Assembly: GCA_044892525.1 (NCBI GenBank)
Contig: CM097887.1
Coordinates: 93,846,397-93,910,396 of the forward strand
DNA length: 64,000 nucleotides
DNA from: Schmidtea polychroa
Lineage: Eukaryota
Direction: 5' to 3'
The notes under the pieces are model-generated. The model saw only the letters and a program-made list of their open reading frames with translations, searched no databases and was not told where the DNA came from. This document shows positions 26,609 through 57,082 of the stretch, in pieces. Positions within the stretch are counted from its first letter, which is position 1. Each line of letters begins with the position of its first letter. Made by a program: the position numbers and the translations under genes.

Positions 26609-26610
<2 letters not shown>

Positions 26611-27142
26611 TTGGGGTTACACCTCGGCTGACTACCCTACCAAATTGACGGGTCTAAGGGTTGATTGTCCATCTCGAATAAAAGGTGCCATCGATTTGTC
26701 AACCTGGGGTGAAACCCCACATAACTTTCTTCCAACATAGTGCCCGTGAATCACTTCACGTTGGTACTGCACTATGCAGGCGAGACGCCAGCAAGCAGGT
26801 GAGCTTCTGCCTTAAAACTACTCCTTGCTGAGGCCTCGACTTCCCACTTACGACTGCCGTTAGAAGGGCTTACGTCCATTTCCTTACACAACCACTTATC
26901 AGGATTCGCTGAATGCAAATTGGGAATTTCTCACTAGATCTTGCGGGTTCTCTACTCAACCCACTTAATTAAAATCTAATTATTCATGAACGAAAACGTG
27001 TAAGACAACAAGATTTATTAATTTCAACGTTATGACACAAGGATTCAGCTGTACACTTTACTAATGTTTGTCGAAAGAAGAGAAAACATCATAATCAACA
27101 TAGATCGGATCCTTGTTCTTCATCCTGACCGCCACTGGGGTT

Positions 27143-27895
27143 CTATTGTTTCTCCCATTCAGCGTCGGCGAATAATTCGTCGAGGTTAAAAAACTCGGAA
27201 GCGTTCTCTTCCCACGTTACGCCAGCGGCTGATATGATTCGTGCTGAGGGTCCCGTTGTTAGGTCGATGGACACGTGAGAGTTACCACCGTTGGTTGAAT
27301 CCTCTATTGATGGGATGTTTGGCTTTGTAGTGGCGCGTTCGCGCTGTCTCTTCTTGCGCTCTGCACGAGAGAGTTGTTTGCGCTTGGGTTTGCTTGAAGA
27401 TGCCACTTGCAGAGGGGTGACTGATACAGATGGACTAGCAGTGGGGGGCTTACTGGTACCCGTGACGACAACATCTGGTCGCTTGGGGGACAATTCGTTT
27501 TCGACGCAGTCTTGGCACGGTCTCTTGAACGGTGGAGATGGATTCGAGGAAAGGTTGTGATGAGGCGGAAAGATGTCATCGGCCTCTCGGATGGGAATCT
27601 GCACTATTTTTCGGGTTGTAGCCGCCTGCACGTAAACCTTATGCAGTGCCTCGGATTGTTCTCTGATTAGACTTCTTTGGGCACGGCTCTCAGATATTAG
27701 CGCGTCCCGGCAATGCTCGCTACGATCGAGCTTCTTTTGGATCTCCTTCATCCGAGCGGGACTAAACCATGTCCCTTCCAGCTCGTCGATTTTTCGTTTA
27801 TATCGACCGATCTGGGCTTGAAGATCTTTAATCACTGCATTTTTATCTGAGCAGGAGAAGCAGGGACGTAGAGCTGATTTGTTGTTTGGTAACAT
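27143..27895 (-). CDS. LTR-encoded 250-aa protein (3' LTR copy), putative nuclear regulator
   Basis: Coiled coil, PCQDC, KPKRKQLSRAERKKRQRER basic patch, acidic aromatic tail; conserved in the sister LTR. Confidence 0.75.
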   Translation of the reverse strand: MLPNNKSALRPCFSCSDKNAVIKDLQAQIGRYKRKIDELEGTWFSPARMKEIQKKLDRSEHCRDALISESRAQRSLIREQSEALHKVYVQAATTRKIVQIPIREADDIFPPHHNLSSNPSPPFKRPCQDCVENELSPKRPDVVVTGTSKPPTASPSVSVTPLQVASSSKPKRKQLSRAERKKRQRERATTKPNIPSIEDSTNGGNSHVSIDLTTGPSARIISAAGVTWEENASEFFNLDELFADAEWEKQ

Positions 27896-30350
27896 AATGG
27901 ATGGCTAAAGAAGAAAACTATGGTGACTATATCTAAAAATTTCGGATCAGATATACGGTTTATCCGCTATTGGATACTTAGTGCTGGAAGAAAACAAGAC
28001 GAGTCGACGAAACAGGATCCCTCCCTTCACCCTTGATTACTAATATTTTACGTATCCTTTACAGAAAATTATTCCCCAACGCCCTGATTGCTTCCCTGAC
28101 GAATGCAAATTATTTGTAAAAATTTTAATTTTCGTCTATCGCGTTCGAGTTGGATTTCTATCTATCGCACATAAAGGCAATTTACGGATTTATTCATGCC
28201 GGAGCGAATAAACCTATTTCATTACAAATACACTATACTACACTTCGTTTAAATTTCGCTGATTATTTGTTGTTATTCTAATGCAAAATAAGGTTTTTGG
28301 ACCAGATGCAACTAGTAAAAACTTGCACCCTTACCTCAAGTAGCGGAATAAGTAATAACTCGTAATTTCGTATAAACTATACGTCACTATTTTATGATTA
28401 CCCCTTATCCATACCATACGGTGATATCGTCGTAGAAATATAGCATCGTAAAAATATTGTAATTACATAATAATTTGTTATCGGATTTAGTTTTCTATTA
28501 CAATACGTCATTTACAGGGAATATGAGAAATTTAACTACAATATTACTAGCTATTTTATAACCCAAAAATTCCTGTAGATGCTTTAGTTAATTTAAATTT
28601 GGCTCAAAGGCTACTACTATTATTTGTAACATCTAATTAGAATTACGATAAACCTCTACAACACTTAGGTGAAACTTCCTATGGTTTAGTTATAAAGTTT
28701 GGTTTGAATTTTCGGTTATTAATTAAAATACCCCTTCAACAATTTCGATTTTTATTTAGAATATTTAATTTAAGCAAAATTATCTTTAATGAGTGCACTT
28801 TAGAGAGTCTCTTATCTTAGTAGTCGGTTACTGGTTATTTTGGCTTATCTTTTTAGTGGTACGAATGACCTTCATCAGTAGTGAAATTTAAGAGTCAGTC
28901 ATCTGGAAGTCACATCTCATGTCAGCATTATCTAATATGACCACTGATTACTACTCACACACTAAGAATCCTAGAGAGGGTGACACATGGCGGCATTCCC
29001 TGCGGTGAGAGGCACTCGGAATGATTCTGCTGTTTCTCATGCATATTTCTGACCGGATGACGCTACTCATAGTTATGTTAGCAGTATGTCTGTATGTATG
29101 GGTGCCTGTTCGATGGAAATTTTATCGGTAACTATCAACCGTACTGAGCGAACTGCAAATGTTACATCGCGTGTCGATTCCCATCTGAGCTTATGATGTT
29201 GGATTTATTTACTACGACTCGTAATTTCCTCAATATTGGATGTTTTTGAACGATGGGAGATCTCTACGAACCAGCCAACTAGACTCTATGAAGCATATTT
29301 CAGTAGTGGATATTTCGACGCAACAGCATGAAAATTATTCAATGGGTATTACCAGATTTTGTTAATATATGTGATTGAATACAGTATTATTGTGGTTTTA
29401 TGTTTTACTTTTCCTTTATTGTAAATTCCTCATCATATGCTAAGATTTGGATGTCGCATCTGAAAGAGATGACCTAAATTAGATTTACTTTTTCAAAAAT
29501 CTACCGAATGCAATTTCAACTTCTCGATATGTTAGAAAAACCAGCGATGGATGTTTAATGGTATTTTCCCCCACATGGTAAGTTCGGATTTATAGACAGA
29601 AGTGGCATGAATGTCTTATAAGACGACTCTGGACAATACAGAGTTAATATGAGAACTCCCTCAGTCGCTGTGAAGCACATATCCTATTTTCGAAAATTTC
29701 ATAAGGTTTCCTTTCGGTCTATATTTCGGTACTCCGACAGATTTTAAGTCCTTCAGCAATTGGACCCGTGAAGAAGCCTTCACATTTCGGCCCAATCTAG
29801 CTGCGTGATTGAAATACTCCATGTCCACCGGCTGAGCTCCCGAAGGCACCTCGCACCATGACATGGAGTATCTCAACGCCACGTTTCTCGTTAATATTAG
29901 AAATCATAAAACTATCACTTCAAAATAAATATCCATAAAAGTTATGTAAGAGTTCACCTGTTACCAATAAATACTTTTAAACATTTAAATTATTTACTTT
30001 ATCAAAATCGTTATTCAGGATCAAATGAAAAGAGAGTCTGGTTAAATTTAAAAGTTTAATTGCTCATTAAATATACATATTTACTATTAACTTCGAAAAA
30101 CAATATCATAAATAAAAATCCCTTACTATGGAATTAGGCTGAATCGGAAAATTAACGTTAGTCGTTCCAAATTAGTCTGATGATGGTTCGTCGAATGTCG
30201 ATTGCTGTGACTGATTTCGAATTGCTGTGAAGTTTTTCGAATTAACTGTTGCTCTACTTGTATTGCTGATCCTTGAAATAAGTCTCCGTGAGTTGTAGAT
30301 GTCTATGAAATGCTCGGGGTTAACAGTAAAAACAGTAAACATTTTTTCTT

Positions 30351-30434
30351 ACCTATGAAATGCTCGGGGTTAACAGTAAATTTAATGTTTTTGGTAGTTG
30401 TATATATATCAAATTCTTATTTGTGCGGACCAAT
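30351..30434 (-). promoter_or_regulatory. LTR promoter module: CCAAT box, TATA-like run, then splice donor AG/GTAAG (copies at 56662-56745 and solo LTR 25324-25458)
   Basis: GCGGACCAATCAGA-TTGAGTACCGC conserved between diverged LTR families; TATATAA in the solo LTR; donor ~50 nt downstream of the TATA in both. Confidence 0.65.
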
Positions 30435-30996
30435 CAGAGTTGAGTACCGCTTATTTCTATTAATTTAATATAATTTTCTTGTTTTTAGGTTGTTTTCTCC
30501 TTATTTTCTTTATTTTTAATATGTTTTTCTATTTATTTCCTTAATTTCCTTATTATTTCTTGAATTCCTCTTTATTTATTTGTCAACTTGTTCTATTTTA
30601 ATCTTTTCTTAATTTTATTTTTTGTTTTAATTCTTATGTCTTACTTATTATTTTCCTTATATCTTATTCTATTTTATTTCTGATTTTATTTGTTTTATTA
30701 TTATTTTTCTTAATGTTCTACTTCCCTACTTTCCTATTTTTCAACGATTAAATTTTCGACTCAGCCCAACAAATCACTCGGGGACCCATCAAAATTGCGT
30801 CCCGCAATTGCATAATTAACTTAATTCATTCATTCAAAAAAAATATAACACGAACACGGAAAATTATACAACAATGATAAAAATTTTATTGTAAGATCAA
30901 GGTCAAAGCAAGACCAAGCAAGTATCACTTAAGGTGATAGTTTGTACATACAATAAAAGTTTCCACATATAACAACACAAATGTTTGAATTAGAGT

Positions 30997-31638
30997 TTAT
31001 GAACTGTTAACCATTGATGCTTCTGCTGGCGGCTGTTGGTTGGTTTGGGTATTGATGTTGAGATAGGTCTGACTATTAGATTTCGGCTGGATTGGTTGAT
31101 TACTCGGGGTTCGAGGTCGGTTAAGATTTGTCAGGGGCACTTCTTGAGGATTTTGGTTCGAGGTTACTCTTATTGATGTCGAGACTCTACATCTATTTCG
31201 AACTTCGTAAATTTTCATGAATATTGGTAGACATAGGAGGAGGGTTTCTGCGATCACCACATATATGAGATAATGGGTGTCATTGATTTCGGGAGGTATT
31301 TTTGGCTTTTCTACCAGATTTCCAAAATTCTCTTGTTGCATTTGTTGTTCCAACTGGTCGAATTGTTGAATTTGTTCGAGGATTTGTTTGTTTATCATTT
31401 TACAAATGGGATTCTTTTTACACATTGTTTGGATGTTGTTGATGTGTGATCGGGTTGATTGAATGGTTTGGATGATATGGGTTTTTACGGTCATCGGGTA
31501 TGTGCATTGACTGGATTCTTGTTTAGGTTCTTGATTTTGATTTCGGTAATCTCGTACGATTTTCGGTTGGGCGTCTATTTGTTTGCTCTCCATCAGAATC
31601 ATCAATACCATCATTGTTATCATCATCTCGCCTCGCAT
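30997..31638 (-). CDS. Accessory type I membrane protein (signal peptide, helical ectodomain, TM, tail)
   Basis: MMITMMVLMILM signal, TM YLIYVVIAETLLLCLPIFM; likely start MRGEM after an acceptor. Confidence 0.7.
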   Translation of the reverse strand: MRGEMMITMMVLMILMESKQIDAQPKIVRDYRNQNQEPKQESSQCTYPMTVKTHIIQTIQSTRSHINNIQTMCKKNPICKMINKQILEQIQQFDQLEQQMQQENFGNLVEKPKIPPEINDTHYLIYVVIAETLLLCLPIFMKIYEVRNRCRVSTSIRVTSNQNPQEVPLTNLNRPRTPSNQPIQPKSNSQTYLNINTQTNQQPPAEASMVNSS

Positions 31639-31693
31639 GATACTATTATACATTCATTATGTTTATTTACAATTGGTTTTAATGACCCTTAAT

Positions 31694-32392
31694 TTAATGG
31701 TTCTGATTTGGATTATTTTCGCCGATTCTCATCAAGGTGGACTCTGCTTTAATTACCCTGTGTCTTAACTCGGGCAGCATTTCCAATTGTCGGTCTTTTT
31801 CACGGGCTTCTCTCTTTAGATGTCTAATTTCTTTTTCCAAGCGTCTAATTTCTTCCCTTTTCTTTTCAAGGTTTCTTTTTAGCTCGATTTGTAGGAGATC
31901 TTGTTCGTTTTCTTGCAGGTAATTTTGTTGTTGATGTTTTCTTTCTATTTCTCTATATTTGCGGACCCACTTCCTCATTTCTTTACTTTCCCGTTGGTTT
32001 TCTTCTAGTTGTCGTTTTAATTTATTTATAGCTGTTTGGCGCTCCTTCGCCTCAGTTTTCCAGTAGTCTTGGATTACCTCCTTTGCTTTGAAGCTTGCCC
32101 TTTCTTTCCATAGTTCTTCCGCTATCTTTTCCCAGTTTTTCCCTCGCTTCCTTTGTTCGTGTAGCCATTCATTTTCCTCTTCCGTTTCTCTTTTTATTTC
32201 CCCCAACGCTTCGCACTCTTTCTTTAACACCTTTATCATTTTCCGGTCCTCCAGGTATTTGTTTATTAATCTCCCGTTTTCGTATTTCTCTTCCCGTAAC
32301 TCGGCCTTTAGCGTTTGGGTTTCTGTTGTTTCTGCCTCAATCTCTCCCTCTTCTACGTCGCTCATAATTTCTATCATTTCCTCGATTTTCAT
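31694..32392 (-). CDS. Accessory coiled-coil protein (likely start MKIEEM)
   Basis: Long E/K/R heptad-rich ORF with element-like codon usage; acceptor 2 nt before the ATG. Confidence 0.7.
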   Translation of the reverse strand: MKIEEMIEIMSDVEEGEIEAETTETQTLKAELREEKYENGRLINKYLEDRKMIKVLKKECEALGEIKRETEEENEWLHEQRKRGKNWEKIAEELWKERASFKAKEVIQDYWKTEAKERQTAINKLKRQLEENQRESKEMRKWVRKYREIERKHQQQNYLQENEQDLLQIELKRNLEKKREEIRRLEKEIRHLKREAREKDRQLEMLPELRHRVIKAESTLMRIGENNPNQNH

Positions 32393-32560
32393 ATCTATAA
32401 TATGTACAGTTAATGGTGCGCTATAGTGCGACTTATACGTATACATTGATATAAAATTTAATAGTTTGGGTTACAGTCCCTTGAATACTTTTACAATACT
32501 TTAATTTTTTTGTTTGGGATATACGTCCCGGTTTTTAGTTTTTCATCTTTTCATCCACCC

Positions 32561-33616
32561 TCATACGAAGGTTTCCTCCTGGCCTACATAACCTTCATCA
32601 CTATCGACCGCGGAATGTAACTGTATCGCAATAGGGTCGTATGGTAGGTAATATTGGGGAATTTGAGCTCTCAATTCACTAACTTCGTCTCTTAGAGCTC
32701 GAGTGATATTCAATTCCTCGTCGAGCAGATAGGTGAGATACCTTGTCTCTTCATCTTTTGCCTCTATCTGTTTGTCTAGGGCTTTGATTTTCTCGTCGCC
32801 CTTCCATTTTTCAATTTCTATTTCTAAGTTTTTAATATTTTCGGTGTACATTTTCCTTTCGTTTTCTAATTTTCTGTTTTTTCCCGCTAGGACCATGTTT
32901 CTTTGTTCCAGCGATCCTTGTAATCCATTAAGGTCTCTTTTCATCTCTTCTACCTGATTTACTAATTCCACAACCCGTCCCGCTTGTTGGGTTATCATCT
33001 CTTCCATTGCGGCATTCTCGTGCTCTCTTATGTCGCACTTCATTGCCAAATGTCGCTCAAACTCCATAGCCTTTGTTTGCCAGGTTTGGCTTCGGGCGGC
33101 GACCTTTCTCAACCTTTTCAATTCTTCCTTTATTATTAAATTCTCCTCCCATTTACCTTGTTCGCTTTCGTATCCGAGTCTCATGGGCAATTCTTTCATC
33201 TCTTTTTTCATTTCTCTGTTTTGTCTTTTCCATTTTCTCGCTTCTGCCACTAAGTGCATCATTTTCCTGTCTTCTATTTGCTTTTCCGCTTCGCGCTTGG
33301 TGTTCTCATCGGTAAGTCTCTTTCTCGCTTCCTGCACTAGCTGCTTTAAGTAGTGGCTGTGTGCTTCTTGGCGGGTATTTTCCAGTGACGCCCATTTTGA
33401 TGCTCTTTTGCATGCTTCTGCTTCCGCTCTTAAGTTGTGTATTAACCATTGGTATTGACCATTCTCATCTTCTCTAGTTTCTTCGATGTGATTTCGGGTG
33501 AGATTAGTTAGTTGGAACATTACTTTGTTCCATTTTTTGTTATGTTCTCGGGGAATTTGTGTCTTGTTGACCTTGGTTGGGTCTATCGCAGTTTCGGTTA
33601 TTTTCTCTTGTGTCAT
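32561..33616 (-). CDS. Accessory coiled-coil protein, 351 aa
   Basis: Uninterrupted heptad-rich ORF; acceptor 2 nt before the ATG. Confidence 0.72.
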   Translation of the reverse strand: MTQEKITETAIDPTKVNKTQIPREHNKKWNKVMFQLTNLTRNHIEETREDENGQYQWLIHNLRAEAEACKRASKWASLENTRQEAHSHYLKQLVQEARKRLTDENTKREAEKQIEDRKMMHLVAEARKWKRQNREMKKEMKELPMRLGYESEQGKWEENLIIKEELKRLRKVAARSQTWQTKAMEFERHLAMKCDIREHENAAMEEMITQQAGRVVELVNQVEEMKRDLNGLQGSLEQRNMVLAGKNRKLENERKMYTENIKNLEIEIEKWKGDEKIKALDKQIEAKDEETRYLTYLLDEELNITRALRDEVSELRAQIPQYYLPYDPIAIQLHSAVDSDEGYVGQEETFV

Positions 33617-33809
33617 CTCTAAATCATAGACATCGATTAATCTTTTTATTATGAAAAAGGAATTTATTCATTATTTACTGTTTCTTGGGGAATTTTCGCA
33701 TCATTTTTGGGTTTTCGTATTTAGGGTTTTCATACTATTATTATATAATATTTTATTGGTTATATACACCGATATATACAGATTATTATATACAACATTA
33801 TTCGATTGG

Positions 33810-35198
33810 TTACTCCGTTCTACCCTTCTCCTCTTTCCTCACGGTCATCTTGATATATATGGTATCATTTCTCGCCATATCTTCTACTCTTTGTTGTGAG
33901 ATGAACGTAGGTGCTCCTGTTGCTGATCCTTCTTCGTTGAGGGGCCTCTGGTAAGCTATTTGATTCCCCGTTGTTTTGAAGCTTTGCTCATGTATACTTT
34001 GGTTGCTCATCAGAGTAATATCGATTTTTGCCTGGAACGGCCATTCTAATATTTCGTCGTATTCTCCTTTACATAACAGAAAGAAAATCGAAAAGTGCGT
34101 ATCCAATCCGGTTCCGTCCCCGTTGGGATATATCTTCATTTTCATTTTGTACCCATTTTTCCAAGAATGGAATGTAGGACTTGTTATTCTTGTCTCTTCT
34201 CCGGTTTTTGCTTTTCGTATTCTTTCTTTTACTCCCGTTATTTTCCATATGTAGGGTGCTGTTGGGGTTATCTCATTTAGATTTATTTCCCGTATTTTCT
34301 GATGTAGCTCCTTGGCCTGATTATTACTAATTTCTGTTCGGTTTATTTGCATCTTTATGTTTGTTCGGGCTTCTTCGAACGCTTCCCTTTCTTCTAGTAG
34401 TTCTTTGACTAACACTTTCAACGATGTTATCTCTATCTCCATTTGTTTTACTTTCTCTTCGCTTTCTTGTAACGCAGTCGACCACATTTCTGCGTGAGTT
34501 GAAGCATTTTCTACTAAATGATGTGGTAACTCACCTCGGTGTAGTAGTTTCTGACAACCCCATCTACCTAGTACACATGTCATTCTTTTCTTTTCGCATT
34601 CCCTTAGATGCTGTGCCACCTTCATTATTTCCCCTTGGTTACATCCGTTTGGGCATTCCCCACTGAACTCCGCACATACTCTCTCCTCTTGGACATTGTG
34701 ATGTTTGAGGGTGAGATTTATCCTCGTATCTATTTCTCCACAGTGTTCACATCTTTCGAATCTCTCTTCACACTGCCTTTGATGCTCTTTTTCTTCGCTT
34801 GCTCGAATGGTTTTATGGCACCTTTCACACTGGCCAATTCTGTACATACATTCTCCCATATGTTGTACTACCTTCCATATTACTCCTTTCCATTCGCATG
34901 GGGCATTTTTGCATCCCAGGTTGGTGTTTAACATGTCTTTCACTGCGGCTTTATCCTCGTTAGTGTCTTCTAAACTCGATATTAGTGTCTCTTTACACAC
35001 CGGGCACCTCTGTGGTCTATTCTTTATTGCTTCACTGATACATTCTTTACATACTCTGCATCCACATTGCGTTTGGTGAGGTTCCTTTAACAACTTTTCA
35101 CATATTCCGCACATAACATGTTTGTGTATTCTGATCGTTGTAGATTTTCGGACTTGCTCGACAATCTCTCTGAACTCTTCTCTTTGTCGTTTATCCAT
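33810..35198 (-). CDS. TRAF-family protein (RING, TRAF zinc fingers, coiled coil, MATH), intronless
   Basis: CGICEKLLKEPHQTQCGCRVCKEC...CPVC; CKNAPCEWKG; CPNGC; MATH YIWKI...GYKM...YPNGDGTG...HFSIFF...GEYDEILEWPF. Confidence 0.93.
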   Translation of the reverse strand: MDKRQREEFREIVEQVRKSTTIRIHKHVMCGICEKLLKEPHQTQCGCRVCKECISEAIKNRPQRCPVCKETLISSLEDTNEDKAAVKDMLNTNLGCKNAPCEWKGVIWKVVQHMGECMYRIGQCERCHKTIRASEEKEHQRQCEERFERCEHCGEIDTRINLTLKHHNVQEERVCAEFSGECPNGCNQGEIMKVAQHLRECEKKRMTCVLGRWGCQKLLHRGELPHHLVENASTHAEMWSTALQESEEKVKQMEIEITSLKVLVKELLEEREAFEEARTNIKMQINRTEISNNQAKELHQKIREINLNEITPTAPYIWKITGVKERIRKAKTGEETRITSPTFHSWKNGYKMKMKIYPNGDGTGLDTHFSIFFLLCKGEYDEILEWPFQAKIDITLMSNQSIHEQSFKTTGNQIAYQRPLNEEGSATGAPTFISQQRVEDMARNDTIYIKMTVRKEEKGRTE

Positions 35199-35283
35199 TC
35201 TATAATTATATGTACAAATAGTTCTTATCGATACAGGTTCGATATTTTATTTACAATTATTTACATTTTAAGCTAGGTTTGGT

Positions 35284-35643
35284 TTAGGGTTCGGAAGAGT
35301 CGGCTTCGTGTCCGCTCTCCTCTCTATTCATTAGCCATTCCGACCAGTCTTCTATTTCTGTCTGTTCTGCTTCCTCCCTCATTCGGTCTATTTCAATTTC
35401 CTGCCGACGGCTATATTGGGTTATCCTCTCTATCTCTCTTTGCATTTGTTCTATTTTTAACCTCTGGTCTTCAATTATCTTCAAATAACTAAATCCTCTG
35501 TTCATACTCTCGATCAGGTTTCTGTGCATCGTCAGTCCTTGTTCTTGCAAATTGGACACTAATTGTGCTAATACGGCACATTGTTGCTTCCATAATTCTT
35601 CAGTTACTGTATTGTGGTTTATTTCGTTATTTCCTTGATCCAT
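35284..35643 (-). CDS. Small accessory coiled-coil protein (likely start MDQGNN)
   Basis: Heptad-rich with an acidic end; acceptor 2 nt before the ATG. Confidence 0.6.
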   Translation of the reverse strand: MDQGNNEINHNTVTEELWKQQCAVLAQLVSNLQEQGLTMHRNLIESMNRGFSYLKIIEDQRLKIEQMQREIERITQYSRRQEIEIDRMREEAEQTEIEDWSEWLMNREESGHEADSSEP

Positions 35644-35803
35644 TCCTAATTTATATACACTTTTCAACTCTTATGTAAATTTAATTTTATTTTATGATTC
35701 CCGTTATCGTATAATATTGATACCGCGCTTATATAAAGATATAGTACTGTTATATACATAAGATATACTTACTTTTTACAATTATATACAGTCATATTCC
35801 TTT

Positions 35804-37270: not shown

Positions 37271-38950
37271 CGTCCCCCCCTTAGTTGGGTATTCTTTACC
37301 ATCGCATTTTCTCCGTTTTCGTAGAATTCGTTTACATTTATCGCATATTTATTATTTTGTGGTACTCTCCAGGTTAATAATAATTTCATTGCTTCTAGAT
37401 TTTTCCGTACCGTATTCCATTGAAACTGAGATGTGTTTTTGCACATATTTTCAACTTCTTCTTTTGTCGCATTTTTGCAAATAAATCTGATCATTTCTAG
37501 GTTTGGCTGTATGGTTGCCCAGTCCAAGGTGGAATTTCCTTCATTGGACCTTTCGTCTAGTTTCGATCCTGATTGATGTAGGATGTGGAGTGTTTTTGGG
37601 TGTATTTTTGTTATAGCTGCATACATCATGGCGGTTTCGCCTTGTTCATTTTTCGTGTTGGTTTCCTCGCCCATATCTCCAAGGATTCTCACGATCGTTA
37701 TTGCTCTATTTTCTTTCGCTGCTAGTATTGCTTGTTGTAGGGGTGTTCGGGAATCCTTCGTTACCATCGTAAATGCTCGAGGCAAGAAGGTTTTGATTTT
37801 CCCGATATCTAAACCCGTGGTTTGATCTCTTGCGTATGTATGTACAGCTTTTATTATTTTTGACAATATTATTTCGTCTGACAACTCTAGCATTTCCTCA
37901 AAGAATACCTCTTTCGCTTTGCGTATTATTGCCTCCTGATCTATACTCATTGATTTGGTTTCGATGACGTTGTTTATGACCGTTTGGTTCGTTGTTGACT
38001 TTGATTCCCTGGATTTCTCATACCTTATTTTCGTTTTCTTTCCGTTTGGATTATTGATTCGTTCCTCTGCTGTAAGTATTTGGATAATATCCAGGTAATT
38101 CTCGCGGATGTTATTCATTGTGTCCATCATATATAACACACTTACCGTTTCCCAATATTTATTTCGTACTTGGTTAGTAAATTGGAATAGTGATTTTTCG
38201 AATGTGTCGATTCGCTTTTTTGTTAACTGTTCGTCTTTGTGATTTGTGAATTTTATCCCTCGTTCTAGTAATTGATTCGGGATTTCGAATAAATGATGTC
38301 CTTTCATAGCTTCTCTCATCAGCGTGTTCTCTCCTCTCGTGAACGCTTCGTTTACGTTGATCATATAATCGTTTCGAATTGGATTTCTCCATGTAATTAA
38401 TATTCCGGTAATTGTCGTCAGTTTTTCTTTGATCGCTGTTAGCAATCCATCATACATGTTTCCGACTTCCCGATTGTCCTCATATGATAGTAGTTCCATC
38501 AATGACGTGAACGCCTCGGTACTTCTCCCTCTGATAGCATGATGTAGAGCGTTTTTCCGCTCGTGGTCTTGTGTAGTTATTTTCGATCCGGTATCGAGTA
38601 ATGCGGTTATAATGTCTTTTGTTTTTCCTCTGTTTGCTGCTATCATTAATGGTGTGTAACCTTGGTTGTTTGTTTGTTCTGTTGATCGCTTGCAGTCGTG
38701 AAATGCTTCTATTGTTTCTAGTATTTGCTCGTTGTTACCTACTTTCATGAGTTTGTGTAATGGTGTGTCTCCGTAATGATCTGTTATTGTAAATAATATT
38801 GGCCATTGGCTTTTGACTACTCGCAATAATGGGTGTGTCCTTTCTCTATTTGCATAGTTCTCGATCATCGTCAATAATCCTCCTAATATTTCGAAATCTA
38901 ATCGATCTTTTGCCCATCCAGGTATTTTAATTTTTACCTCTTTTACAATC
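37255..38950 (-). other. Ankyrin-repeat region C-terminal to integrase
   Basis: GDTPLH, GYTPLMIAANRG, KNALHHA, SRTPLQQA, GETAMMYAA, GNSTLDWA. Confidence 0.88.
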
Positions 38951-50967: not shown

Positions 50968-51520
50968 TTACGACTGGCTGGCACTATTCAACAGCTCAAT
51001 CTTCTTCCTTCTGATCGGTTAGACTATTCAACAACTCGATCTTACGACTGGCTGGCATTATTCAACAGCTCAATCTTCCTCCTTCCTGATCGGTTGGACT
51101 TTTCACAACTCGACCTTACGACTGGCTGGCACTATTCAACAGCTCAATCTTCTTCCTTCTGATCGGTTGGACTTTTCACAACTCGACCTTACGACTGGCT
51201 GGCACTATTCAACAGCTCAGTCTTCCTCCTTCCTGATCGGTTGGACTTTTCACAACTCGACCTTACGACTGGCTGGCACTATTCAACAGCTCAATCTTCT
51301 TCCTTCTGATCGGTTGGACTATTCAACAACTCGATCTTACGACTGGCTGGCACTATTCAACAGCTCAATCTTCCTCCTTCCTGATCGGTTGGACTTTTCA
51401 CAACTCGACCTTACGACTGGCTGGCACTATTCAACAGCTCAATCTTCTTCCTTCTGATCGGTTGGACTTTTCACAACTCGACCTTACGACTGGCTGGCAC
51501 TATTCAACAGCTCAATCTTC
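50968..51520. repeat. Tandem array, 8 copies of a 73-74 bp unit in the element leader
   Basis: Unit starts at 50968, 51042, 51116, 51189, 51263, 51337, 51411, 51484; internal ctattcaaca sub-repeat. Confidence 0.95.
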
Positions 51521-52095: not shown

Positions 52096-52581
52096 TCATT
52101 CGCCATAATAGACCATATGGGTCTCTTTTATTTCATATTTGCACATCGTGCATCTTTTTAGGTCTTTTACACACTCTTCACAGTGACTGAGGTGTCCACA
52201 CGGTAAGAATAATACGCGAATAGGACGGAGTTTGCAGGCTATACAAGTTCGTAATTGGTTAACTTTTTCCTGTATTTTTTGTTCGATTGCATCTGGTATT
52301 GTATTTAGTGAGTCTTTTAGACGCTGATAATCTAGATTTAATGTTGGGTGGTTCAATCTCTCTTGATACCACTGATATACGGTTTCGGGGTTTATTTTTC
52401 CATCTGGGCGACTTAGGCCTGTGGCTAATATCATATGATTAGGTACGACTGGTGTTTGTCCGATTGCTTGTAGTAATATCGCGTTGATTTTTTCTCTTTT
52501 ATGCGTCAGTGTTGTTAGGGAGTCGTTTTCTATATCGATAAACTTGAGCAGTTGTTGCATTTGGTTCGCGAATTCTGTCAT
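52096..52581 (-). CDS. Accessory ORF with IAP-type C-terminal RING, no BIR visible
   Basis: CIACKLRPIRVLFLPCGHLSHCEEC...CTMCKYEI; acceptor ttttccaacag 2 nt before the ATG. Confidence 0.82.
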   Translation of the reverse strand: MTEFANQMQQLLKFIDIENDSLTTLTHKREKINAILLQAIGQTPVVPNHMILATGLSRPDGKINPETVYQWYQERLNHPTLNLDYQRLKDSLNTIPDAIEQKIQEKVNQLRTCIACKLRPIRVLFLPCGHLSHCEECVKDLKRCTMCKYEIKETHMVYYGE

Positions 52582-52894
52582 AGCTGTTGGAAAAGTAATG
52601 TTTTAATAATATGTAGTAAATTAATAGTTAATTCGTTAATTGGTTTCTTTAACCATTGTTAATTATTTAATTTGACTACTTTATCTCCTTTATTTATATC
52701 CTTAATTTTTCTATTATCTACATTTTGATTTTCTCTACTTAGTTCCTAATATAATTTAATAATCAATAGTTAATTGGCATTCGTCAAGCAATGGTCGGTC
52801 GAAAACAGAAAATCGATGTGATAAATCCCTTTAATTTTTTATGAAAATCCCGGTGAATTTCGCATTCGTTAATAGAAATTTCGATCGATTGTAG

Positions 52895-52912
52895 ATCCCG
52901 GCTGAGCCCCCA
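52895..52912 (-). promoter_or_regulatory. Primer binding site, tRNA-Pro type
   Basis: Sense TGGGGGCTCAGCCGGGAT vs the MLV tRNA-Pro PBS TGGGGGCTCGTCCGGGAT (16/18); 7 nt from the 5' LTR. Confidence 0.85.
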
Positions 52913-52919
52913 ATAATCA

Positions 52920-55900
52920 TGTTGGGGTTACACCTCGGCTGACTACCCTACCAAATTGACGGGTCTAAGGGTTGATTGTCCATCTCGAATAAAAGGTGCC
53001 ATCGATTTGTCAACCTGGGGTGAAACCCCACATAACTTTCTTCCAACATAGTGCCCGTGAATCACTTCACGTTGGTACTGCACTATGCAGGCGAGACGCC
53101 AGCAAGCAGGTGAGCTTCTGCCTTAAAACTACTCCTTGCTGAGGCCTCGACTTCCCACTTACGACTGCCGTTAGAAGGGCTTACGTCCATTTCCTTACAC
53201 AACCACTTATCAGGATTCGCTGAATGCAAATTGGGAATTTCTCACTAGATCTTGCGGGTTCTCTACTCAACCCACTTAATTAAAATCTAATTATTCATGA
53301 ACGAAAACGTGTAAGACAACAAGATTTATTAATTTCAACGTTATGACACAAGGATTCAGCTGTACACTTTACTAATGTTTGTCGAAAGAAGAGAAAACAT
53401 CATAATCAACATAGATCGGATCCTTGTTCTTCATCCTGACCGCCACTGGGGTTCTATTGTTTCTCCCATTCAGCGTCGGCGAATAATTCGTCGAGGTTAA
53501 AAAACTCGGAAGCGTTCTCTTCCCACGTTACGCCAGCGGCTGATATGATTCGTGCTGAGGGTCCCGTTGTTAGGTCGATGGACACGTGAGAGTTACCACC
53601 GTTGGTTGAATCCTCTATTGATGGGATGTTTGGCTTTGTAGTGGCGCGTTCGCGCTGTCTCTTCTTGCGCTCTGCACGAGAGAGTTGTTTGCGCTTGGGT
53701 TTGCTTGAAGATGCCACTTGCAGAGGGGTGACTGATACAGATGGACTAGCAGTGGGGGGCTTACTGGTACCCGTGACGACAACATCTGGTCGCTTGGGGG
53801 ACAATTCGTTTTCGACGCAGTCTTGGCACGGTCTCTTGAACGGTGGAGATGGATTCGAGGAAAGGTTGTGATGAGGCGGAAAGATGTCATCGGCCTCTCG
53901 GATGGGAATCTGCACTATTTTTCGGGTTGTAGCCGCCTGCACGTAAACCTTATGCAGTGCCTCGGATTGTTCTCTGATTAGACTTCTTTGGGCACGGCTC
54001 TCAGATATTAGCGCGTCCCGGCAATGCTCGCTACGATCGAGCTTCTTTTGGATCTCCTTCATCCGAGCGGGACTAAACCATGTCCCTTCCAGCTCGTCGA
54101 TTTTTCGTTTATATCGACCGATCTGGGCTTGAAGATCTTTAATCACTGCATTTTTATCTGAGCAGGAGAAGCAGGGACGTAGAGCTGATTTGTTGTTTGG
54201 TAACATAATGGATGGCTAAAGAAGAAAACTATGGTGACTATATCTAAAAATTTCGGATCAGATATACGGTTTATCCGCTATTGGATACTTAGTGCTGGAA
54301 GAAAACAAGACGAGTCGACGAAACAGGATCCCTCCCTTCACCCTTGATTACTAATATTTTACGTATCCTTTACAGAAAATTATTCCCCAACGCCCTGATT
54401 GCTTCCCTGACGAATGCAAATTATTTGTAAAAATTTTAATTTTCGTCTATCGCGTTCGAGTTGGATTTCTATCTATCGCACATAAAGGCAATTTACGGAT
54501 TTATTCATGCCGGAGCGAATAAACCTATTTCATTACAAATACACTATACTACACTTCGTTTAAATTTCGCTGATTATTTGTTGTTATTCTAATGCAAAAT
54601 AAGGTTTTTGGACCAGATGCAACTAGTAAAAACTTGCACCCTTACCTCAAGTAGCGGAATAAGTAATAACTCGTAATTTCGTATAAACTATACGTCACTA
54701 TTTTATGATTACCCCTTATCCATACCATACGGTGATATCGTCGTAGAAATATAGCATCGTAAAAATATTGTAATTACATAATAATTTGTTATCGGATTTA
54801 GTTTTCTATTACAATACGTCATTTACAGGGAATATGAGAAATTTAACTACAATATTACTAGCTATTTTATAACCCAAAAATTCCTGTAGATGCTTTAGTT
54901 AATTTAAATTTGGCTCAAAGGCTACTACTATTATTTGTAACATCTAATTAGAATTACGATAAACCTCTACAACACTTAGGTGAAACTTCCTATGGTTTAG
55001 TTATAAAGTTTGGTTTGAATTTTCGGTTATTAATTAAAATACCCCTTCAACAATTTCGATTTTTATTTAGAATATTTAATTTAAGCAAAATTATCTTTAA
55101 TGAGTGCACTTTAGAGAGTCTCTTATCTTAGTAGTCGGTTACTGGTTATTTTGGCTTATCTTTTTAGTGGTACGAATGACCTTCATCAGTAGTGAAATTT
55201 AAGAGTCAGTCATCTGGAAGTCACATCTCATGTCAGCATTATCTAATATGACCACTGATTACTACTCACACACTAAGAATCCTAGAGAGGGTGACACATG
55301 GCGGCATTCCCTGCGGTGAGAGGCACTCGGAATGATTCTGCTGTTTCTCATGCATATTTCTGACCGGATGACGCTACTCATAGTTATGTTAGCAGTATGT
55401 CTGTATGTATGGGTGCCTGTTCGATGGAAATTTTATCGGTAACTATCAACCGTACTGAGCGAACTGCAAATGTTACATCGCGTGTCGATTCCCATCTGAG
55501 CTTATGATGTTGGATTTATTTACTACGACTCGTAATTTCCTCAATATTGGATGTTTTTGAACGATGGGAGATCTCTACGAACCAGCCAACTAGACTCTAT
55601 GAAGCATATTTCAGTAGTGGATATTTCGACGCAACAGCATGAAAATTATTCAATGGGTATTACCAGATTTTGTTAATATATGTGATTGAATACAGTATTA
55701 TTGTGGTTTTATGTTTTACTTTTCCTTTATTGTAAATTCCTCATCATATGCTAAGATTTGGATGTCGCATCTGAAAGAGATGACCTAAATTAGATTTACT
55801 TTTTCAAAAATCTACCGAATGCAATTTCAACTTCTCGATATGTTAGAAAAACCAGCGATGGATGTTTAATGGTATTTTCCCCCACATGGTAAGTTCGGAT

Positions 55901-57081
55901 TTATAGACAGAAGTGGCATGAATGTCTTATAAGACGACTCTGGACAATACAGAGTTAATATGAGAACTCCCTCAGTCGCTGTGAAGCACATATCCTATTT
56001 TCGAAAATTTCATAAGGTTTCCTTTCGGTCTATATTTCGGTACTCCGACAGATTTTAAGTCCTTCAGCAATTGGACCCGTGAAGAAGCCTTCACATTTCG
56101 GCCCAATCTAGCTGCGTGATTGAAATACTCCATGTCCACCGGCTGAGCTCCCGAAGGCACCTCGCACCATGACATGGAGTATCTCAACGCCACGTTTCTC
56201 GTTAATATTAGAAATCATAAAACTATCACTTCAAAATAAATATCCATAAAAGTTATGTAAGAGTTCACCTGTTACCAATAAATACTTTTAAACATTTAAA
56301 TTATTTACTTTATCAAAATCGTTATTCAGGATCAAATGAAAAGAGAGTCTGGTTAAATTTAAAAGTTTAATTGCTCATTAAATATACATATTTACTATTA
56401 ACTTCGAAAAACAATATCATAAATAAAAATCCCTTACTATGGAATTAGGCTGAATCGGAAAATTAACGTTAGTCGTTCCAAATTAGTCTGATGATGGTTC
56501 GTCGAATGTCGATTGCTGTGACTGATTTCGAATTGCTGTGAAGTTTTTCGAATTAACTGTTGCTCTACTTGTATTGCTGATCCTTGAAATAAGTCTCCGT
56601 GAGTTGTAGATGTCTATGAAATGCTCGGGGTTAACAGTAAAAACAGTAAACATTTTTTCTTACCTATGAAATGCTCGGGGTTAACAGTAAATTTAATGTT
56701 TTTGGTAGTTGTATATATATCAAATTCTTATTTGTGCGGACCAATCAGAGTTGAGTACCGCTTATTTCTATTAATTTAATATAATTTTCTTGTTTTTAGG
56801 TTGTTTTCTCCTTATTTTCTTTATTTTTAATATGTTTTTCTATTTATTTCCTTAATTTCCTTATTATTTCTTGAATTCCTCTTTATTTATTTGTCAACTT
56901 GTTCTATTTTAATCTTTTCTTAATTTTATTTTTTGTTTTAATTCTTATGTCTTACTTATTATTTTCCTTATATCTTATTCTATTTTATTTCTGATTTTAT
57001 TTGTTTTATTATTATTTTTCTTAATGTTCTACTTCCCTACTTTCCTATTTTTCAACGATTAAATTTTCGACTCAGCCCAAC

Positions 57082-57082
<1 letters not shown>
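52920..57082 (-). repeat. 5' LTR (4163 bp)
   Basis: Same termini and length as the 3' LTR; adjacent to the PBS. Confidence 0.96.
53454..54206 (-). CDS. LTR-encoded 250-aa protein (5' LTR copy)
   Basis: Translation identical to 27143-27895. Confidence 0.75.
   Translation of the reverse strand: MLPNNKSALRPCFSCSDKNAVIKDLQAQIGRYKRKIDELEGTWFSPARMKEIQKKLDRSEHCRDALISESRAQRSLIREQSEALHKVYVQAATTRKIVQIPIREADDIFPPHHNLSSNPSPPFKRPCQDCVENELSPKRPDVVVTGTSKPPTASPSVSVTPLQVASSSKPKRKQLSRAERKKRQRERATTKPNIPSIEDSTNGGNSHVSIDLTTGPSARIISAAGVTWEENASEFFNLDELFADAEWEKQ

What the first reader, a model, noticed from the sequence alone, without database searches (positions are those of the whole stretch)
26609..57082. An intact 30.5-kb enveloped-virus-like Gypsy element carrying a cell-death/NF-kB modulation toolkit
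Seen: equal-length, apparently identical 4.16-kb LTRs, a stop-free 12.4-kb polyprotein and 7-8 further intact ORFs, including Bcl-2-like, IAP-type RING, TRAF, ubiquitin-like and ankyrin modules plus a fusion glycoprotein. Established: ordinary Gypsy elements are 5-10 kb; ~30-kb 'Burro' LTR families are known from Schmidtea. Bcl-2, IAP, TRAF and ankyrin (IkB-like) proteins are the host-control modules large DNA viruses typically steal. Inference: this is a recently active, potentially infectious 'complex' metavirus that keeps its host cell alive and tunes TNF/NF-kB signalling. Whether this exact gene set is already described cannot be checked here.
Basis: partly seen in the sequence, partly recalled or inferred. 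Interest (0 to 1): 0.95.

Follow-up and report, generated by a model that had tools for sequence, protein, structure and literature searches.

The report
Intact giant Burro-type planarian retroelement
This is a complete, very recently inserted 30.5-kb copy of a 'Burro'-type giant Gypsy retroelement of planarian flatworms, carrying an envelope gene and host-like cell-death and ubiquitin modules; it is striking but was already described between 2007 and 2019.

Summary
Two 4,163-bp LTRs (26609-30771 and 52920-57082) are 100% identical, have TG..CA ends and sit in a (TAA)n microsatellite with a 4-bp flank. The element lies on the minus strand. It has one stop-free 4,133-aa polyprotein and seven more open frames, plus an eighth inside each LTR.

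Strongly confirmed: Gag with three CCHC knuckles, an in-frame mononegavirus-type fusion glycoprotein (Pfam E 5e-70), PR-RT-RNaseH-IN (Ty3, E 7e-113), ankyrin repeats, a full TRAF and an IAP-type RING. The Bcl-2-like and ubiquitin-like calls stay below threshold here (E 0.09 and 0.04). The ankyrins show nothing specific to IkB.

This architecture is the published Burro family of Schmidtea (GYPSM1, Jurka 2007; Grohme 2018; Arkhipova & Yushenova 2019). That literature already lists the in-frame env, MATH/TRAF, Ubl, BCL2, RING/BIR and ankyrin modules, and already proposes interference with host pathways. This copy differs from Burro-1 in layout: ORF1 is shorter and TRAF is a separate 3' gene.

Details I did not find described are an LTR-embedded ORF under purifying selection, a signal-peptide-like stretch just after the Bcl-2-like region, and a compact 3' cassette of six ORFs. 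Infectivity and host modulation remain inference. Interest is low to moderate.

The parts
52920..57082 (-). 5' LTR (4,163 bp; element runs on the minus strand)
   Evidence: 100% identical to 26609-30771, TG..CA ends
26609..30771 (-). 3' LTR (4,163 bp)
   Evidence: Blocks conserved with an older related solo LTR lie at LTR positions 1-300, 900-1050, 2850-3600 and 3900-4050
26605..26608 (.). 4-bp flank ATAA, repeated at 57083-57086 (candidate target-site duplication inside the (TAA)n array)
   Evidence: It is ambiguous inside a microsatellite, but the related solo LTR has an unambiguous 4-bp duplication
53454..54206 (-). 250-aa ORF inside the LTR (twin copy at 27143-27895); basic stretch and acidic C-terminus; no known family
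   Evidence: 67% aa identity to the 258-aa ORF of the solo LTR. Codon-position identity is 0.69/0.78/0.36; pN 0.23 against saturated pS. No Pfam or PDB hit
52894..52912 (-). Candidate tRNA primer-binding site, 7 nt after the 5' LTR; its complement ends in CCA
   Evidence: Read. The tRNA was not identified; there is no tRNA gene in the window
52096..52581 (-). 161-aa ORF upstream of gag with a C-terminal IAP-type RING (no BIR found)
   Evidence: Pfam zf-C3HC4_3 E 3e-11; PDB cIAP2, cIAP1 and XIAP RING, E 2e-10 to 8e-7
50968..51520 (.). 74-bp tandem repeat, 7.5 copies, in the ORF-free 2.4-kb leader between the RING ORF and gag
37255..49656 (-). Single 4,133-aa Gag-...-Env-Pol-Ank polyprotein, intact (0 stops, 0 frameshifts)
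49222..49503 (-). Gag (Retrotrans_gag), aa 52-145
   Evidence: Pfam E 3e-9
48751..48903 (-). Three CCHC zinc knuckles, aa 252-302
45976..46188 (-). Ubiquitin-like region, aa ~1157-1227 (sub-threshold); no C-terminal di-glycine
   Evidence: Pfam ubiquitin E 0.037; PDB ubiquitin variants E 0.3-0.4 over the whole fold; sequence read
44992..45210 (-). Bcl-2-like region, aa ~1483-1555 (sub-threshold; inconclusive)
   Evidence: Pfam Bcl-2 E 0.093. GGW at the end of the match, no BH1 motif. The structure model is all-helical but has pLDDT 46, and no fold hit was significant
43036..44859 (-). Env: Monjiviricetes-type fusion glycoprotein, aa ~1600-2207. It has a Met-rich signal-peptide-like stretch at ~1602-1617, 14 ectodomain Cys, and the only strong transmembrane segment of the polyprotein at 2170-2206
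   Evidence: PF24664 E 5e-70 / 2e-72; hydropathy; 32% identity over 604 aa to P0001
42193..42468 (-). Aspartic protease, aa 2397-2488 (D[ST]G at 2411)
41053..41529 (-). Reverse transcriptase, aa 2710-2868 (YxDD at 2817)
   Evidence: Ty3 Gag-Pol 7q5b E 7e-113
40477..40866 (-). RNase H, aa 2931-3060
39586..40155 (-). Integrase (H2C2 zinc domain plus catalytic core), aa 3168-3357
37468..38733 (-). C-terminal extension with two ankyrin-repeat blocks (aa 3642-3721 and 3978-4063)
35804..37180 (-). 458-aa ORF; E/K-rich, two moderately hydrophobic segments; no known family
35284..35667 (-). Short ORF (127 aa from TTG, 119 aa from ATG); no known family
33810..35198 (-). 462-aa full-length TRAF-like protein (RING, TRAF zinc fingers, coiled coil, MATH)
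   Evidence: Pfam MATH E 6e-27; PDB TRAF3, TRAF2 and TRAF1 E 1e-27, TRAF6 RING-ZF E 4e-14
32561..33616 (-). 351-aa ORF; E/K/L-rich, coiled-coil-like; no known family
31694..32446 (-). 250-aa ORF; 20% Glu, coiled-coil-like; no known family
30997..31653 (-). 218-aa ORF; Q/N/I-rich, one transmembrane-like segment (aa 126-151); no known family

Best explanation
This is a complete, very young genomic copy of a Burro-family giant Ty3/Gypsy (Metaviridae) LTR retroelement of a dugesiid planarian, most likely Schmidtea. It is on the minus strand, inserted into a (TAA)n microsatellite.

Shown: identical 4.16-kb LTRs; a candidate tRNA primer site; a single 4,133-aa polyprotein ordered Gag, three CCHC knuckles, about 850 aa of unknown function, Ubl-like, Bcl-2-like, Env, PR, RT, RNase H, IN, ankyrin. 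An IAP-type RING gene lies 5' of gag. A compact cassette of six ORFs, including a full TRAF, lies 3' of pol. Each LTR contains a protein-coding ORF.

Inferred mechanism:
1. The LTR drives a genomic RNA.
2. The polyprotein is threaded through the ER membrane at the internal signal-peptide-like stretch and the single transmembrane segment. This would put the Env ectodomain in the lumen and leave Gag-...-Bcl-2-like and PR-RT-IN-Ank in the cytosol.
3. The element's protease, and possibly signal peptidase, cut the polyprotein.
4. tRNA-primed reverse transcription and integration make a 4-bp duplication.
5. The host-derived intronless modules (RING E3, TRAF adaptor/E3, Ubl, Bcl-2-like, ankyrin) plausibly act on host ubiquitin, cell-death and TRAF-type signalling in the cells where the element is expressed.
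6. The accessory ORFs need spliced or otherwise processed subgenomic mRNAs.

None of the functional steps was tested here.
For: - Structure.
- Ty3/Gypsy identity: RT-RH-IN matches Ty3 Gag-Pol 7q5b at E 7e-113 over 670 aa.
- Env: PF24664 E 5e-70, one transmembrane segment, a signal-peptide-like Met-rich stretch.
- TRAF and RING.
- One unit rather than a patchwork: all ORFs are on one strand. GC is about 0.39 with a strong A-excess on the coding strand from 30 to 52 kb, against GC about 0.27 in the flanks. Spacers are short, 40-225 nt. ORF content is far above the shuffles.
- Family behaviour: a diverged solo LTR of the same kind 0.8 kb away has an unambiguous 4-bp duplication and keeps the LTR ORF.
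- Literature: Burro/GYPSM1 has the same size and the same Gag with three CCHC knuckles in S. mediterranea. It also has env in frame between gag and pol, MATH/TRAF, Ubl, BCL2, RING/BIR, ankyrin and tandem repeats (PMC6431247). BURRO1 is transcribed and under SMEDWI-2/piRNA control (PMC8532177). A GAG-ENV-POL order is reported in flatworm Ty3/gypsy elements (PMC13524379).
Against: - Species and family name (Burro-1 to -4) could not be verified by nucleotide comparison.
- None of the element's proteins, and no close relative, is in the protein collections.
- The layout differs from published Burro-1, whose ORF1 has 4,873 aa with MATH inside. No BIR and no dUTPase-like domain were detected.
- Bcl-2-like and Ubl are sub-threshold. 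Both structure models were too poor to use.
- No clear polypurine tract lies next to the 3' LTR.
- Perfectly identical 4-kb LTRs could partly reflect assembly polishing of a multi-copy repeat.
- There is no expression, processing or particle evidence for this copy.
Confidence: 0.9

Rival explanations
1. It replicates only as an intracellular retrotransposon. On this reading the env domain and the host-like modules are carried along but no longer mediate cell-to-cell transfer or host control, so 'enveloped-virus-like' describes ancestry and not present function.
For: - Env sits inside the Gag-Pol frame with no start of its own that can be shown.
- The ectodomain has only one N-glycosylation sequon.
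- Thousands of genomic Burro copies are reported, and germline or stem-cell retrotransposition alone would explain them.
- RNAi against BURRO1 and RT inhibitors did not change the smedwi-2 phenotype (PMC8532177).
Against: - Env is fully open over about 600 aa. It keeps a signal-peptide-like start, 14 Cys and the transmembrane anchor, and it matches the viral family at E 5e-70.
- The same env-PR-RT-RH-IN order is kept in a relative that is only 32-41% identical (P0001), which argues for long-term retention.
Confidence: 0.3
2. Assembly chimera or nested composite. Two LTRs of a repeat family bracket unrelated host genes (TRAF, RING and others) or other elements, so the '30-kb element' is not one transposing unit.
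For: - The host genome is repeat-rich and hard to assemble.
- The window holds masked or gap stretches and another LTR of the same kind close by.
- Exactly identical LTRs are what a collapsed or polished repeat would also give.
Against: - Composition and strand bias are uniform through the whole internal 22 kb.
- All ORFs are co-oriented and intronless with short spacers.
- The candidate primer-binding site lies next to the 5' LTR.
- The microsatellite phase continues across the insertion once one 4-bp flank is removed.
- There are no N runs inside 26609-57082.
- The same module set is reported for independent Burro families and for another planarian genus.
Confidence: 0.04
3. The four or five orphan ORFs of the 3' cassette (458, 127, 351, 250 and 218 aa) are not genes. 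They would be open frames tolerated by the T-poor coding strand of a very young copy.
For: - No Pfam, PDB or database relatives.
- They are E/K-rich and of low complexity.
- The coding strand has only 19% T, which lowers stop-codon frequency.
- A copy with identical LTRs has had no time to decay.
Against: - In 500 dinucleotide-preserving shuffles the longest ORF never exceeded 189 aa. The total in ORFs of 100 aa or more never exceeded 237 aa, against 1,858 aa observed.
- The ORFs tile the region head to tail with AT-rich spacers that carry AATAAA at 8.1 per kb, against 1.4 per kb in coding sequence.
- The confirmed TRAF gene lies among them.
Confidence: 0.1

Closest known systems
[quoted passage not shown] 2018; Arkhipova & Yushenova 2019, PMC6431247)
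   Same: - More than 30 kb long with multi-kb LTRs, and Ty3/Gypsy pol order.
- Gag with three CCHC knuckles.
- env in frame between gag and pol, with hits to mononegavirus glycoproteins.
- MATH/TRAF, Ubl, BCL2-like, RING (IAP-related) and ankyrin modules.
- Internal tandem repeats and an AT-rich planarian host.
   Different: - Burro-1 ORF1 is given as 4,873 aa with MATH_TRAF_C inside it. Here ORF1 is 4,133 aa and a complete TRAF is a separate gene 3' of pol.
- No BIR and no dUTPase-like domain were detected here.
- I could not compare nucleotides, so which Burro family this copy belongs to is open.
Burro-like element of Dugesia (Girardia) tigrina (PMC6431247)
   Same: A giant polyprotein with Gag, env and pol. 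MATH/TRAF is encoded by an accessory ORF and not within ORF1.
   Different: That element has a 5,140-aa ORF1, two CCHC knuckles, a midasin-like region, and the MATH ORF upstream. Here there are three knuckles and the TRAF gene is downstream of pol.
GAG-ENV-POL envelope-carrying Ty3/gypsy elements of Platyhelminthes, Nematoda and Bryozoa (PMC13524379; Sacco et al. 2022, as cited there)
   Same: Env lies between gag and pol in a Ty3/gypsy backbone, and the env was taken from an RNA- or DNA-virus-type fusogen. An unnamed database relative (P0001) shows the same env-PR-RT-RH-IN order.
   Different: Those are described as three ORFs of ordinary size with a gB-type env. Here env is fused in frame into one polyprotein and the element carries about 10 further modules. 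The fold class of this env could not be established.
Complex retroviruses with accessory genes, including ORFs that lie in the LTR (analogy from general knowledge, not tested)
   Same: Accessory genes lie 3' of pol and inside the LTR, which implies subgenomic mRNAs.
   Different: The polymerase lineage differs (Ty3/Gypsy). The accessory proteins are not homologous. Nothing is known about their expression.
Large DNA viruses that carry Bcl-2, IAP and ankyrin genes (analogy from general knowledge)
   Same: The same kinds of host-derived modules are present.
   Different: This is a retroelement. Function is untested, and the Bcl-2 assignment is weak here.

Membership tests
Ty3/Gypsy (Metaviridae) LTR retroelements | LTRs with TG..CA ends, and a short target-site duplication | tested here: met
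   The 4-bp flank is ambiguous in the microsatellite but unambiguous (AATG) at the related solo LTR
Ty3/Gypsy (Metaviridae) LTR retroelements | Domain order PR-RT-RNaseH-IN, with the RT/IN sequence closest to Ty3 | tested here: met
   Pfam order; Ty3 Gag-Pol 7q5b E 7e-113, Ty3 RT 4ol8 E 1e-88
Ty3/Gypsy (Metaviridae) LTR retroelements | tRNA primer-binding site after the 5' LTR and a polypurine tract before the 3' LTR | tested here: inconclusive
   There is a 19-nt stretch whose complement ends in CCA, 7 nt after the LTR. The tRNA was not identified, and no clear polypurine tract was seen
Burro giant retroelements of planarians | Total length above 30 kb with an internal region above 20 kb | tested here: met
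   30,474 bp in total, 22,148 bp internal
Burro giant retroelements of planarians | Gag with retrotrans_gag followed by three CCHC knuckles (S. mediterranea type) | tested here: met
   compared
Burro giant retroelements of planarians | env homology in frame between gag and pol | tested here: met
   PF24664 at aa ~1600-2207 of the single ORF
Burro giant retroelements of planarians | MATH/TRAF, IAP-related RING/BIR and ankyrin modules | tested here: met
   TRAF, IAP-type RING, ankyrin. BIR itself was not found
Burro giant retroelements of planarians | Ubl/SUMO-like and BCL2-like domains before env | tested here: inconclusive
   Pfam E 0.037 and 0.093, in the published order. The database has no relatives from which to build a profile. 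The model has pLDDT 46 and no fold hit was significant
Burro giant retroelements of planarians | dUTPase-like domain between PR and RT (reported for Burro-1) | tested here: not met
   No Pfam hit at E<=1 in aa 2480-2720. This is a single-sequence search only, so a diverged domain is not excluded
Burro giant retroelements of planarians | Nucleotide or RT-tree affinity to the Burro-1 to -4 reference sequences; host is a dugesiid planarian | not testable with these tools
   The reference sequences are not in any collection here, and fetching them was left out. Flank GC of 0.23-0.29 fits the reported >70% A/T
gB-type (class III) env-carrying GAG-ENV-POL Ty3/gypsy elements | gag-env-pol order | tested here: met
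gB-type (class III) env-carrying GAG-ENV-POL Ty3/gypsy elements | Env with a class III (gB/G-like) fold | tested here: inconclusive
   No PDB sequence match, with a single sequence or with a 3-sequence profile. The AlphaFold model has pLDDT 38 and is unusable
Bcl-2 family | Significant match to the Bcl-2 profile or fold, with BH1 and BH2 motifs | tested here: inconclusive
   E 0.093 against a cut-off of 31.4 bits. A GGW lies at the BH2 position and there is no BH1 motif. Fold search: Bcl-2 members appear only among the noise, at E>4
IkB proteins | Ankyrin domain specifically related to IkB | tested here: not met
   The top 60 PDB hits are ankyrins, latrotoxin ANK, Kidins220, TRPA1 and DARPins, with no IkB among them

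The most novel reading that the evidence does not exclude
This copy may represent a Burro lineage whose organisation goes beyond what has been described.
1. It would be a membrane-threaded polyprotein in which the env signal peptide directly follows the Bcl-2-like domain and could double as its membrane anchor.
2. It would have a protein-coding gene inside the LTR that has been kept under purifying selection across LTR families which are otherwise diverged to saturation.
3. It would have a 3' cassette of six genes separated by AATAAA-bearing AT-rich spacers, some ending in an acceptor-like AG just before the ATG. Such a cassette could be resolved into separate mRNAs by splicing or by the spliced-leader trans-splicing that planarians possess.

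If all three hold, it would be the most gene-rich 'complex' retroelement known outside vertebrate retroviruses.
Probability: 0.2. Interest if true: 0.6.

Novelty: already known. Interest (0 to 1): 0.3.

Why it matters
Burro elements are the largest LTR retroelements known. They fill a sizeable part of planarian genomes, hamper their assembly, and are expressed in differentiated tissues under PIWI control.

An intact copy with identical LTRs is a clean reference for the coding capacity of an active lineage. It shows which modules are fused into the polyprotein and which are separate genes, and so how modules move between the two states across Burro families.

Three details are concrete handles for existing RNA and proteome data: the conserved LTR-embedded ORF, the signal-peptide-like start of the in-frame env, and the tiled 3' cassette. 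They would help test how a 22-kb retroelement genome is expressed.

None of this changes the classification. The kind of element and the host-manipulation hypothesis are already published.

Tried and rejected
1. Finding other copies or relatives at protein level.
- The whole polyprotein gave only two distant hits, P0001 and P0002.
- None of the nine ORFs is in the 15-billion-protein collection.
- The Ubl/Bcl-2 segment gave nothing by word search and nothing by full HMMER against 1.84 billion representatives.
- Env gave two unnamed hits.
- No family alignment could therefore be built. Per-ORF selection tests were not possible, except for the LTR ORF.

2. Structure route for the Bcl-2-like region. 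The single-sequence AlphaFold model had pLDDT 46. Foldseek against the PDB found nothing below E 1.

3. Structure route for env. A 3-sequence alignment gave pLDDT 38, so I did not run a fold search on it. PDB sequence and profile searches were empty.

4. BIR, dUTPase, chromodomain and 2A-like peptides were not found.

5. Rfam found nothing and no tRNA gene lies in the window.

6. A shared junction motif upstream of the accessory ORFs: only AT-rich k-mers that include AATAAA. This is suggestive and not significant on its own.

7. IkB-like reading of the ankyrins: rejected as unsupported.

8. The + strand RING ORF at 25911-26402 as part of this element: rejected. It lies outside the LTR, on the other strand, in AT-rich DNA.

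Method note: short generic family motifs (for example D[ST]G, YxDD, CCHC, GGW) were used as regular expressions.

Full report
**1. Observation**

The window has a direct repeat at an offset of 26,311 bp. The identical run is 26608-30772 / 52919-57083, with no mismatch. Trimmed to the TG..CA termini (inverted ends TGTTGGG / CCCAACA), the LTRs are 26609-30771 and 52920-57082.

It interrupts a perfect (TAA)n array: 14 units on the left and 18 on the right. Both flanks read ATAA. Removing the element and one ATAA restores the repeat phase. Inside a microsatellite this is weak evidence for a target-site duplication. A related solo LTR nearby has an unambiguous 4-bp duplication (section 5 below). 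There are no N runs inside the element.

**2. Orientation and layout**

All long ORFs are on the minus strand, so the 5' LTR is the one at 52920-57082. In the element's own direction the order is:
- 5' LTR, which contains a 250-aa ORF at 53454-54206.
- A 19-nt stretch, 7 nt after the LTR, whose complement ends in CCA. This is a candidate primer-binding site (52894-52912).
- A 161-aa RING ORF (52096-52581).
- A 2.4-kb leader with no ORF of 35 aa or more on this strand, holding 7.5 copies of a 74-bp tandem repeat (50968-51520).
- The 12,402-nt polyprotein ORF (49656 down to 37255).
- Six tiled ORFs of 458, 127/119, 462, 351, 250 and 218 aa, separated by spacers of 40-193 nt. The first follows the polyprotein stop after 74 nt, and the last ends 225 nt before the 3' LTR.
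- The 3' LTR, with the second copy of the LTR ORF.

About 84% of the 22.1-kb internal region is open reading frame. No gene of the element is broken: I counted 0 stops, 0 frameshifts and 0 recognisable insertions in the polyprotein.

**3. The polyprotein** (Pfam; motifs; hydropathy)

| Region (aa) | Assignment | Evidence |
|---|---|---|
| 52-145 | Retrotrans_gag | Pfam E 3e-9 |
| 252, 271, 289 | Three CCHC knuckles | Pfam, motif scan |
| ~300-1150 | Nothing recognisable | No Pfam hit |
| ~1157-1227 | Ubiquitin-like, sub-threshold | Pfam E 0.037; PDB ubiquitin variants E 0.3-0.4 over the whole fold; no terminal di-glycine |
| ~1483-1555 | Bcl-2, sub-threshold | Pfam E 0.093 |
| ~1600-2207 | Monjiviricetes_fusion glycoprotein | PF24664, E 5e-70, profile positions 3-579 of 653 |
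| 2397-2488 | Aspartic protease | D[ST]G at 2411 |
| 2710-2868 | RT | YxDD at 2817 |
| 2931-3060 | RNase H | Pfam |
| 3168-3357 | Integrase | Pfam |
| 3642-3721 and 3978-4063 | Two ankyrin blocks in a ~780-aa C-terminal extension | Pfam |

- The RT-RH-IN stretch matches the Ty3 Gag-Pol polyprotein (7q5b) at E 7e-113 over its whole length. Ty3/Gypsy membership is therefore solid.
- The env part begins with a Met-rich, moderately hydrophobic, signal-peptide-like stretch at ~1602-1617. It has 14 cysteines in the ectodomain and one furin-like site.
- Env ends in the only strongly hydrophobic segment of the whole polyprotein, at 2170-2206.
- The ankyrin blocks hit generic ankyrin proteins and nothing related to IkB.

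**4. Accessory ORFs**

- The 462-aa ORF is a complete TRAF. Its RING and TRAF zinc fingers align to TRAF6 and TRAF5 (E 4e-14). Its coiled coil and MATH domain align to TRAF3, TRAF2 and TRAF1 (E 1e-27).
- The 161-aa ORF ends in an IAP-type RING: cIAP2, cIAP1 and XIAP, E 2e-10 to 8e-7. No BIR repeat was found anywhere.
- The 458-, 127-, 351-, 250- and 218-aa ORFs have no Pfam or PDB match. Two are coiled-coil-like E/K-rich proteins, and the last has one transmembrane-like segment.
- They are not chance frames. In 500 dinucleotide-preserving shuffles of the 6.5-kb region, the longest ATG ORF never exceeded 189 aa. The total in ORFs of 100 aa or more never exceeded 237 aa, against 1,858 aa observed.
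- The spacers are AT-rich and carry AATAAA at 8.1 per kb, against 1.4 per kb in coding sequence. Some spacers end in an acceptor-like pyrimidine tract plus AG just before the ATG. This is suggestive only.

**5. A coding ORF inside the LTR, and a solo LTR next door**

At 21735-25789 lies a 4,055-bp LTR of a related family in the same orientation. It has TG..CA ends and AATG on both sides, so it is a solo LTR.

It is only about 50% identical overall to the element's LTR, close to background over most of its length. Conserved blocks lie at LTR positions 1-300, 900-1050, 2850-3600 and 3900-4050. The third block is the LTR ORF.

The solo LTR keeps an open 258-aa frame that is 67% identical (81% similar) to the 250-aa ORF. 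Identity by codon position is 0.69, 0.78 and 0.36. pN is 0.23 while synonymous sites are saturated. That is the signature of purifying selection on a protein during the divergence of the two lineages.

The protein has an N-terminal helical part, a basic stretch and an acidic C-terminus, and no known relatives. An AATAAA lies about 120 nt after its stop. Whether the ORF sits in U3 or in R cannot be decided from sequence.

**6. Relatives in the databases**

- The collections hold almost nothing of this family. No ORF of the element is present.
- The polyprotein finds only P0001 (2,974 aa, unnamed, 41% identical in pol) and P0002.
- The Ubl/Bcl-2 segment finds nothing at all.
- P0001 has the same env-PR-RT-RH-IN order, followed by an Ig domain. 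Its env is 32% identical over 604 aa. An env fused in front of pol is therefore a lineage trait and not a peculiarity of this copy.

**7. What is already known**

The review by Arkhipova & Yushenova (PMC6431247) summarises Jurka 2007 (GYPSM1) and Grohme et al. 2018 (Burro-1 to -4).
- These are giant Gypsy-like elements of more than 30 kb, present in thousands of copies in Schmidtea mediterranea.
- They have Gag plus three CCHC knuckles, MATH_TRAF_C, Ubi2/SUMO-like, BCL2-like, env in frame between gag and pol (with hits to mononegavirus glycoproteins), PR, dUTPase-like, RT, RH, IN, BIR/RING motifs, ankyrin repeats and tandem repeats.
- The review already proposes that they are integrated proviruses meddling with apoptosis and ubiquitination.
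- BURRO1 is transcribed, mainly in the gut, and is held down by SMEDWI-2/piRNAs (PMC8532177).
- Env-carrying Ty3/gypsy elements with GAG-ENV-POL order are reported for Platyhelminthes (PMC13524379).
- The host of this window was not identified directly. Flank composition (GC 0.23-0.29) and the three-knuckle Gag fit Schmidtea.

Compared with the Burro-1 description, this copy has a shorter ORF1 (4,133 against 4,873 aa). It has TRAF as a separate complete gene 3' of pol and not as a MATH domain inside ORF1. I detected no BIR or dUTPase. I could not tell whether it equals Burro-2, -3 or -4.

**8. Mechanism (inference unless marked)**

Shown: every enzymatic and structural part needed for an LTR retroelement cycle is intact, and the LTRs are identical. 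With 0 differences in 4,163 bp, LTR divergence is below about 7e-4 per site (95% bound). That is tens to a few hundred thousand years at most under commonly assumed rates of 1e-9 to 1e-8 per site per year. The rates are my assumption; no planarian rate was measured here.

Inferred:
- The polyprotein would be inserted into the ER membrane through the internal signal-peptide-like stretch and the single transmembrane segment.
- The Env ectodomain would then be lumenal, and both the Gag-...-Bcl-2-like part and PR-RT-IN-Ank would be cytosolic.
- The hydrophobic stretch right after the Bcl-2-like region could also serve as its membrane anchor.
- The RING, TRAF, Ubl, Bcl-2-like and ankyrin modules look like intronless captures of host genes. 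They plausibly act on ubiquitin-dependent and cell-death signalling.
- The accessory ORFs require subgenomic, spliced or trans-spliced mRNAs.

No step of this was tested.

**9. Rivals**

- An assembly chimera is unlikely. Composition and strand bias are uniform over the internal 22 kb, the ORFs are co-oriented and tiled, the insertion site is clean, and the same module set is reported in independent Burro families.
- That env and the accessory modules are no longer used cannot be excluded from one copy.
- That the orphan ORFs are chance frames is contradicted by the shuffles.

**11. Verdict**

The kind of element is already known, so interest is low to moderate. The points that may add to the literature are the selected LTR ORF, the signal-peptide placement, and the tiled 3' cassette with a free-standing TRAF gene.

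Noticed in passing
window 21735-25789: A solo LTR (4,055 bp) of a related, deeply diverged Burro-type family, in the same orientation. It has TG..CA ends and an unambiguous 4-bp duplication, AATG. It keeps an open 258-aa frame (22301-23077, minus strand) homologous to the element's LTR ORF.
   Followed up: yes
window 25911-26402 (+): A 163-aa ORF with a C-terminal IAP-type RING (Pfam E 1e-9). It has the same size and architecture as the element's 161-aa RING ORF and is 37% identical over the last 79 aa. It lies on the opposite strand, outside both LTRs, in AT-rich DNA (GC 0.27). It could be a host paralogue or progenitor of the captured gene, or a relic of another element.
   Followed up: partly
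window 14351-15437 (+): A CBP/p300-like host gene piece. KIX (E 1e-21) and bromodomain (E 3e-20) lie only about 130 aa apart in one 296-aa ORF. The CBP/p300 atypical RING (E 4e-16) follows in an overlapping ORF in another frame. This could be an exon structure, a frame change or a compacted paralogue.
   Followed up: partly
window 16898-18398 (+): A 352-aa orphan ORF followed by a 165-aa ORF with an adenovirus-type cysteine protease match (Peptidase_C5, E 4e-6). It abuts an N stretch at 18419-18611. It may be a remnant of a Maverick/Polinton-like or other virus-like element. The N stretches (18419-18611, 20272-20403, 20662-20790, 21277-21573, 60399-60531) were left as they are.
   Followed up: no
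window 57135-57558: A satellite-like array with a 31-bp unit (also scored at periods of 62, 81 and 93 bp), directly after the (AAT)n on the right flank of the element.
   Followed up: no
window 49657-50001 (-): The gag reading frame stays open for 115 codons upstream of the first ATG without any ATG. A spliced 5' exon joining this frame cannot be excluded. It may also be chance on a T-poor strand.
   Followed up: partly
window 27143-27895 vs 22301-23077: Third-codon-position identity between the two LTR ORFs is only 0.36, at random level. Non-coding LTR blocks of 160-300 bp, by contrast, are 83-87% identical. So some non-coding LTR segments are far more conserved than synonymous sites of the ORF. 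This points to strong cis constraints or a mosaic history.
   Followed up: partly
P0001 (database protein, 2,974 aa, unnamed): A distant relative with the same env-PR-RT-RNaseH-IN order and an immunoglobulin domain after the integrase. This is another case of a host-like module appended to pol. Its source organism is not given.
   Followed up: partly
window 30772-37254 (-): The spacers between the 3' accessory ORFs are AT-rich and carry AATAAA at 8.1 per kb, against 1.4 per kb in coding sequence. Three ORFs are preceded by an AG within 5 nt of the ATG. This is compatible with separate 3'-end formation and splice-acceptor use for each gene, but it may simply reflect composition.
   Followed up: partly
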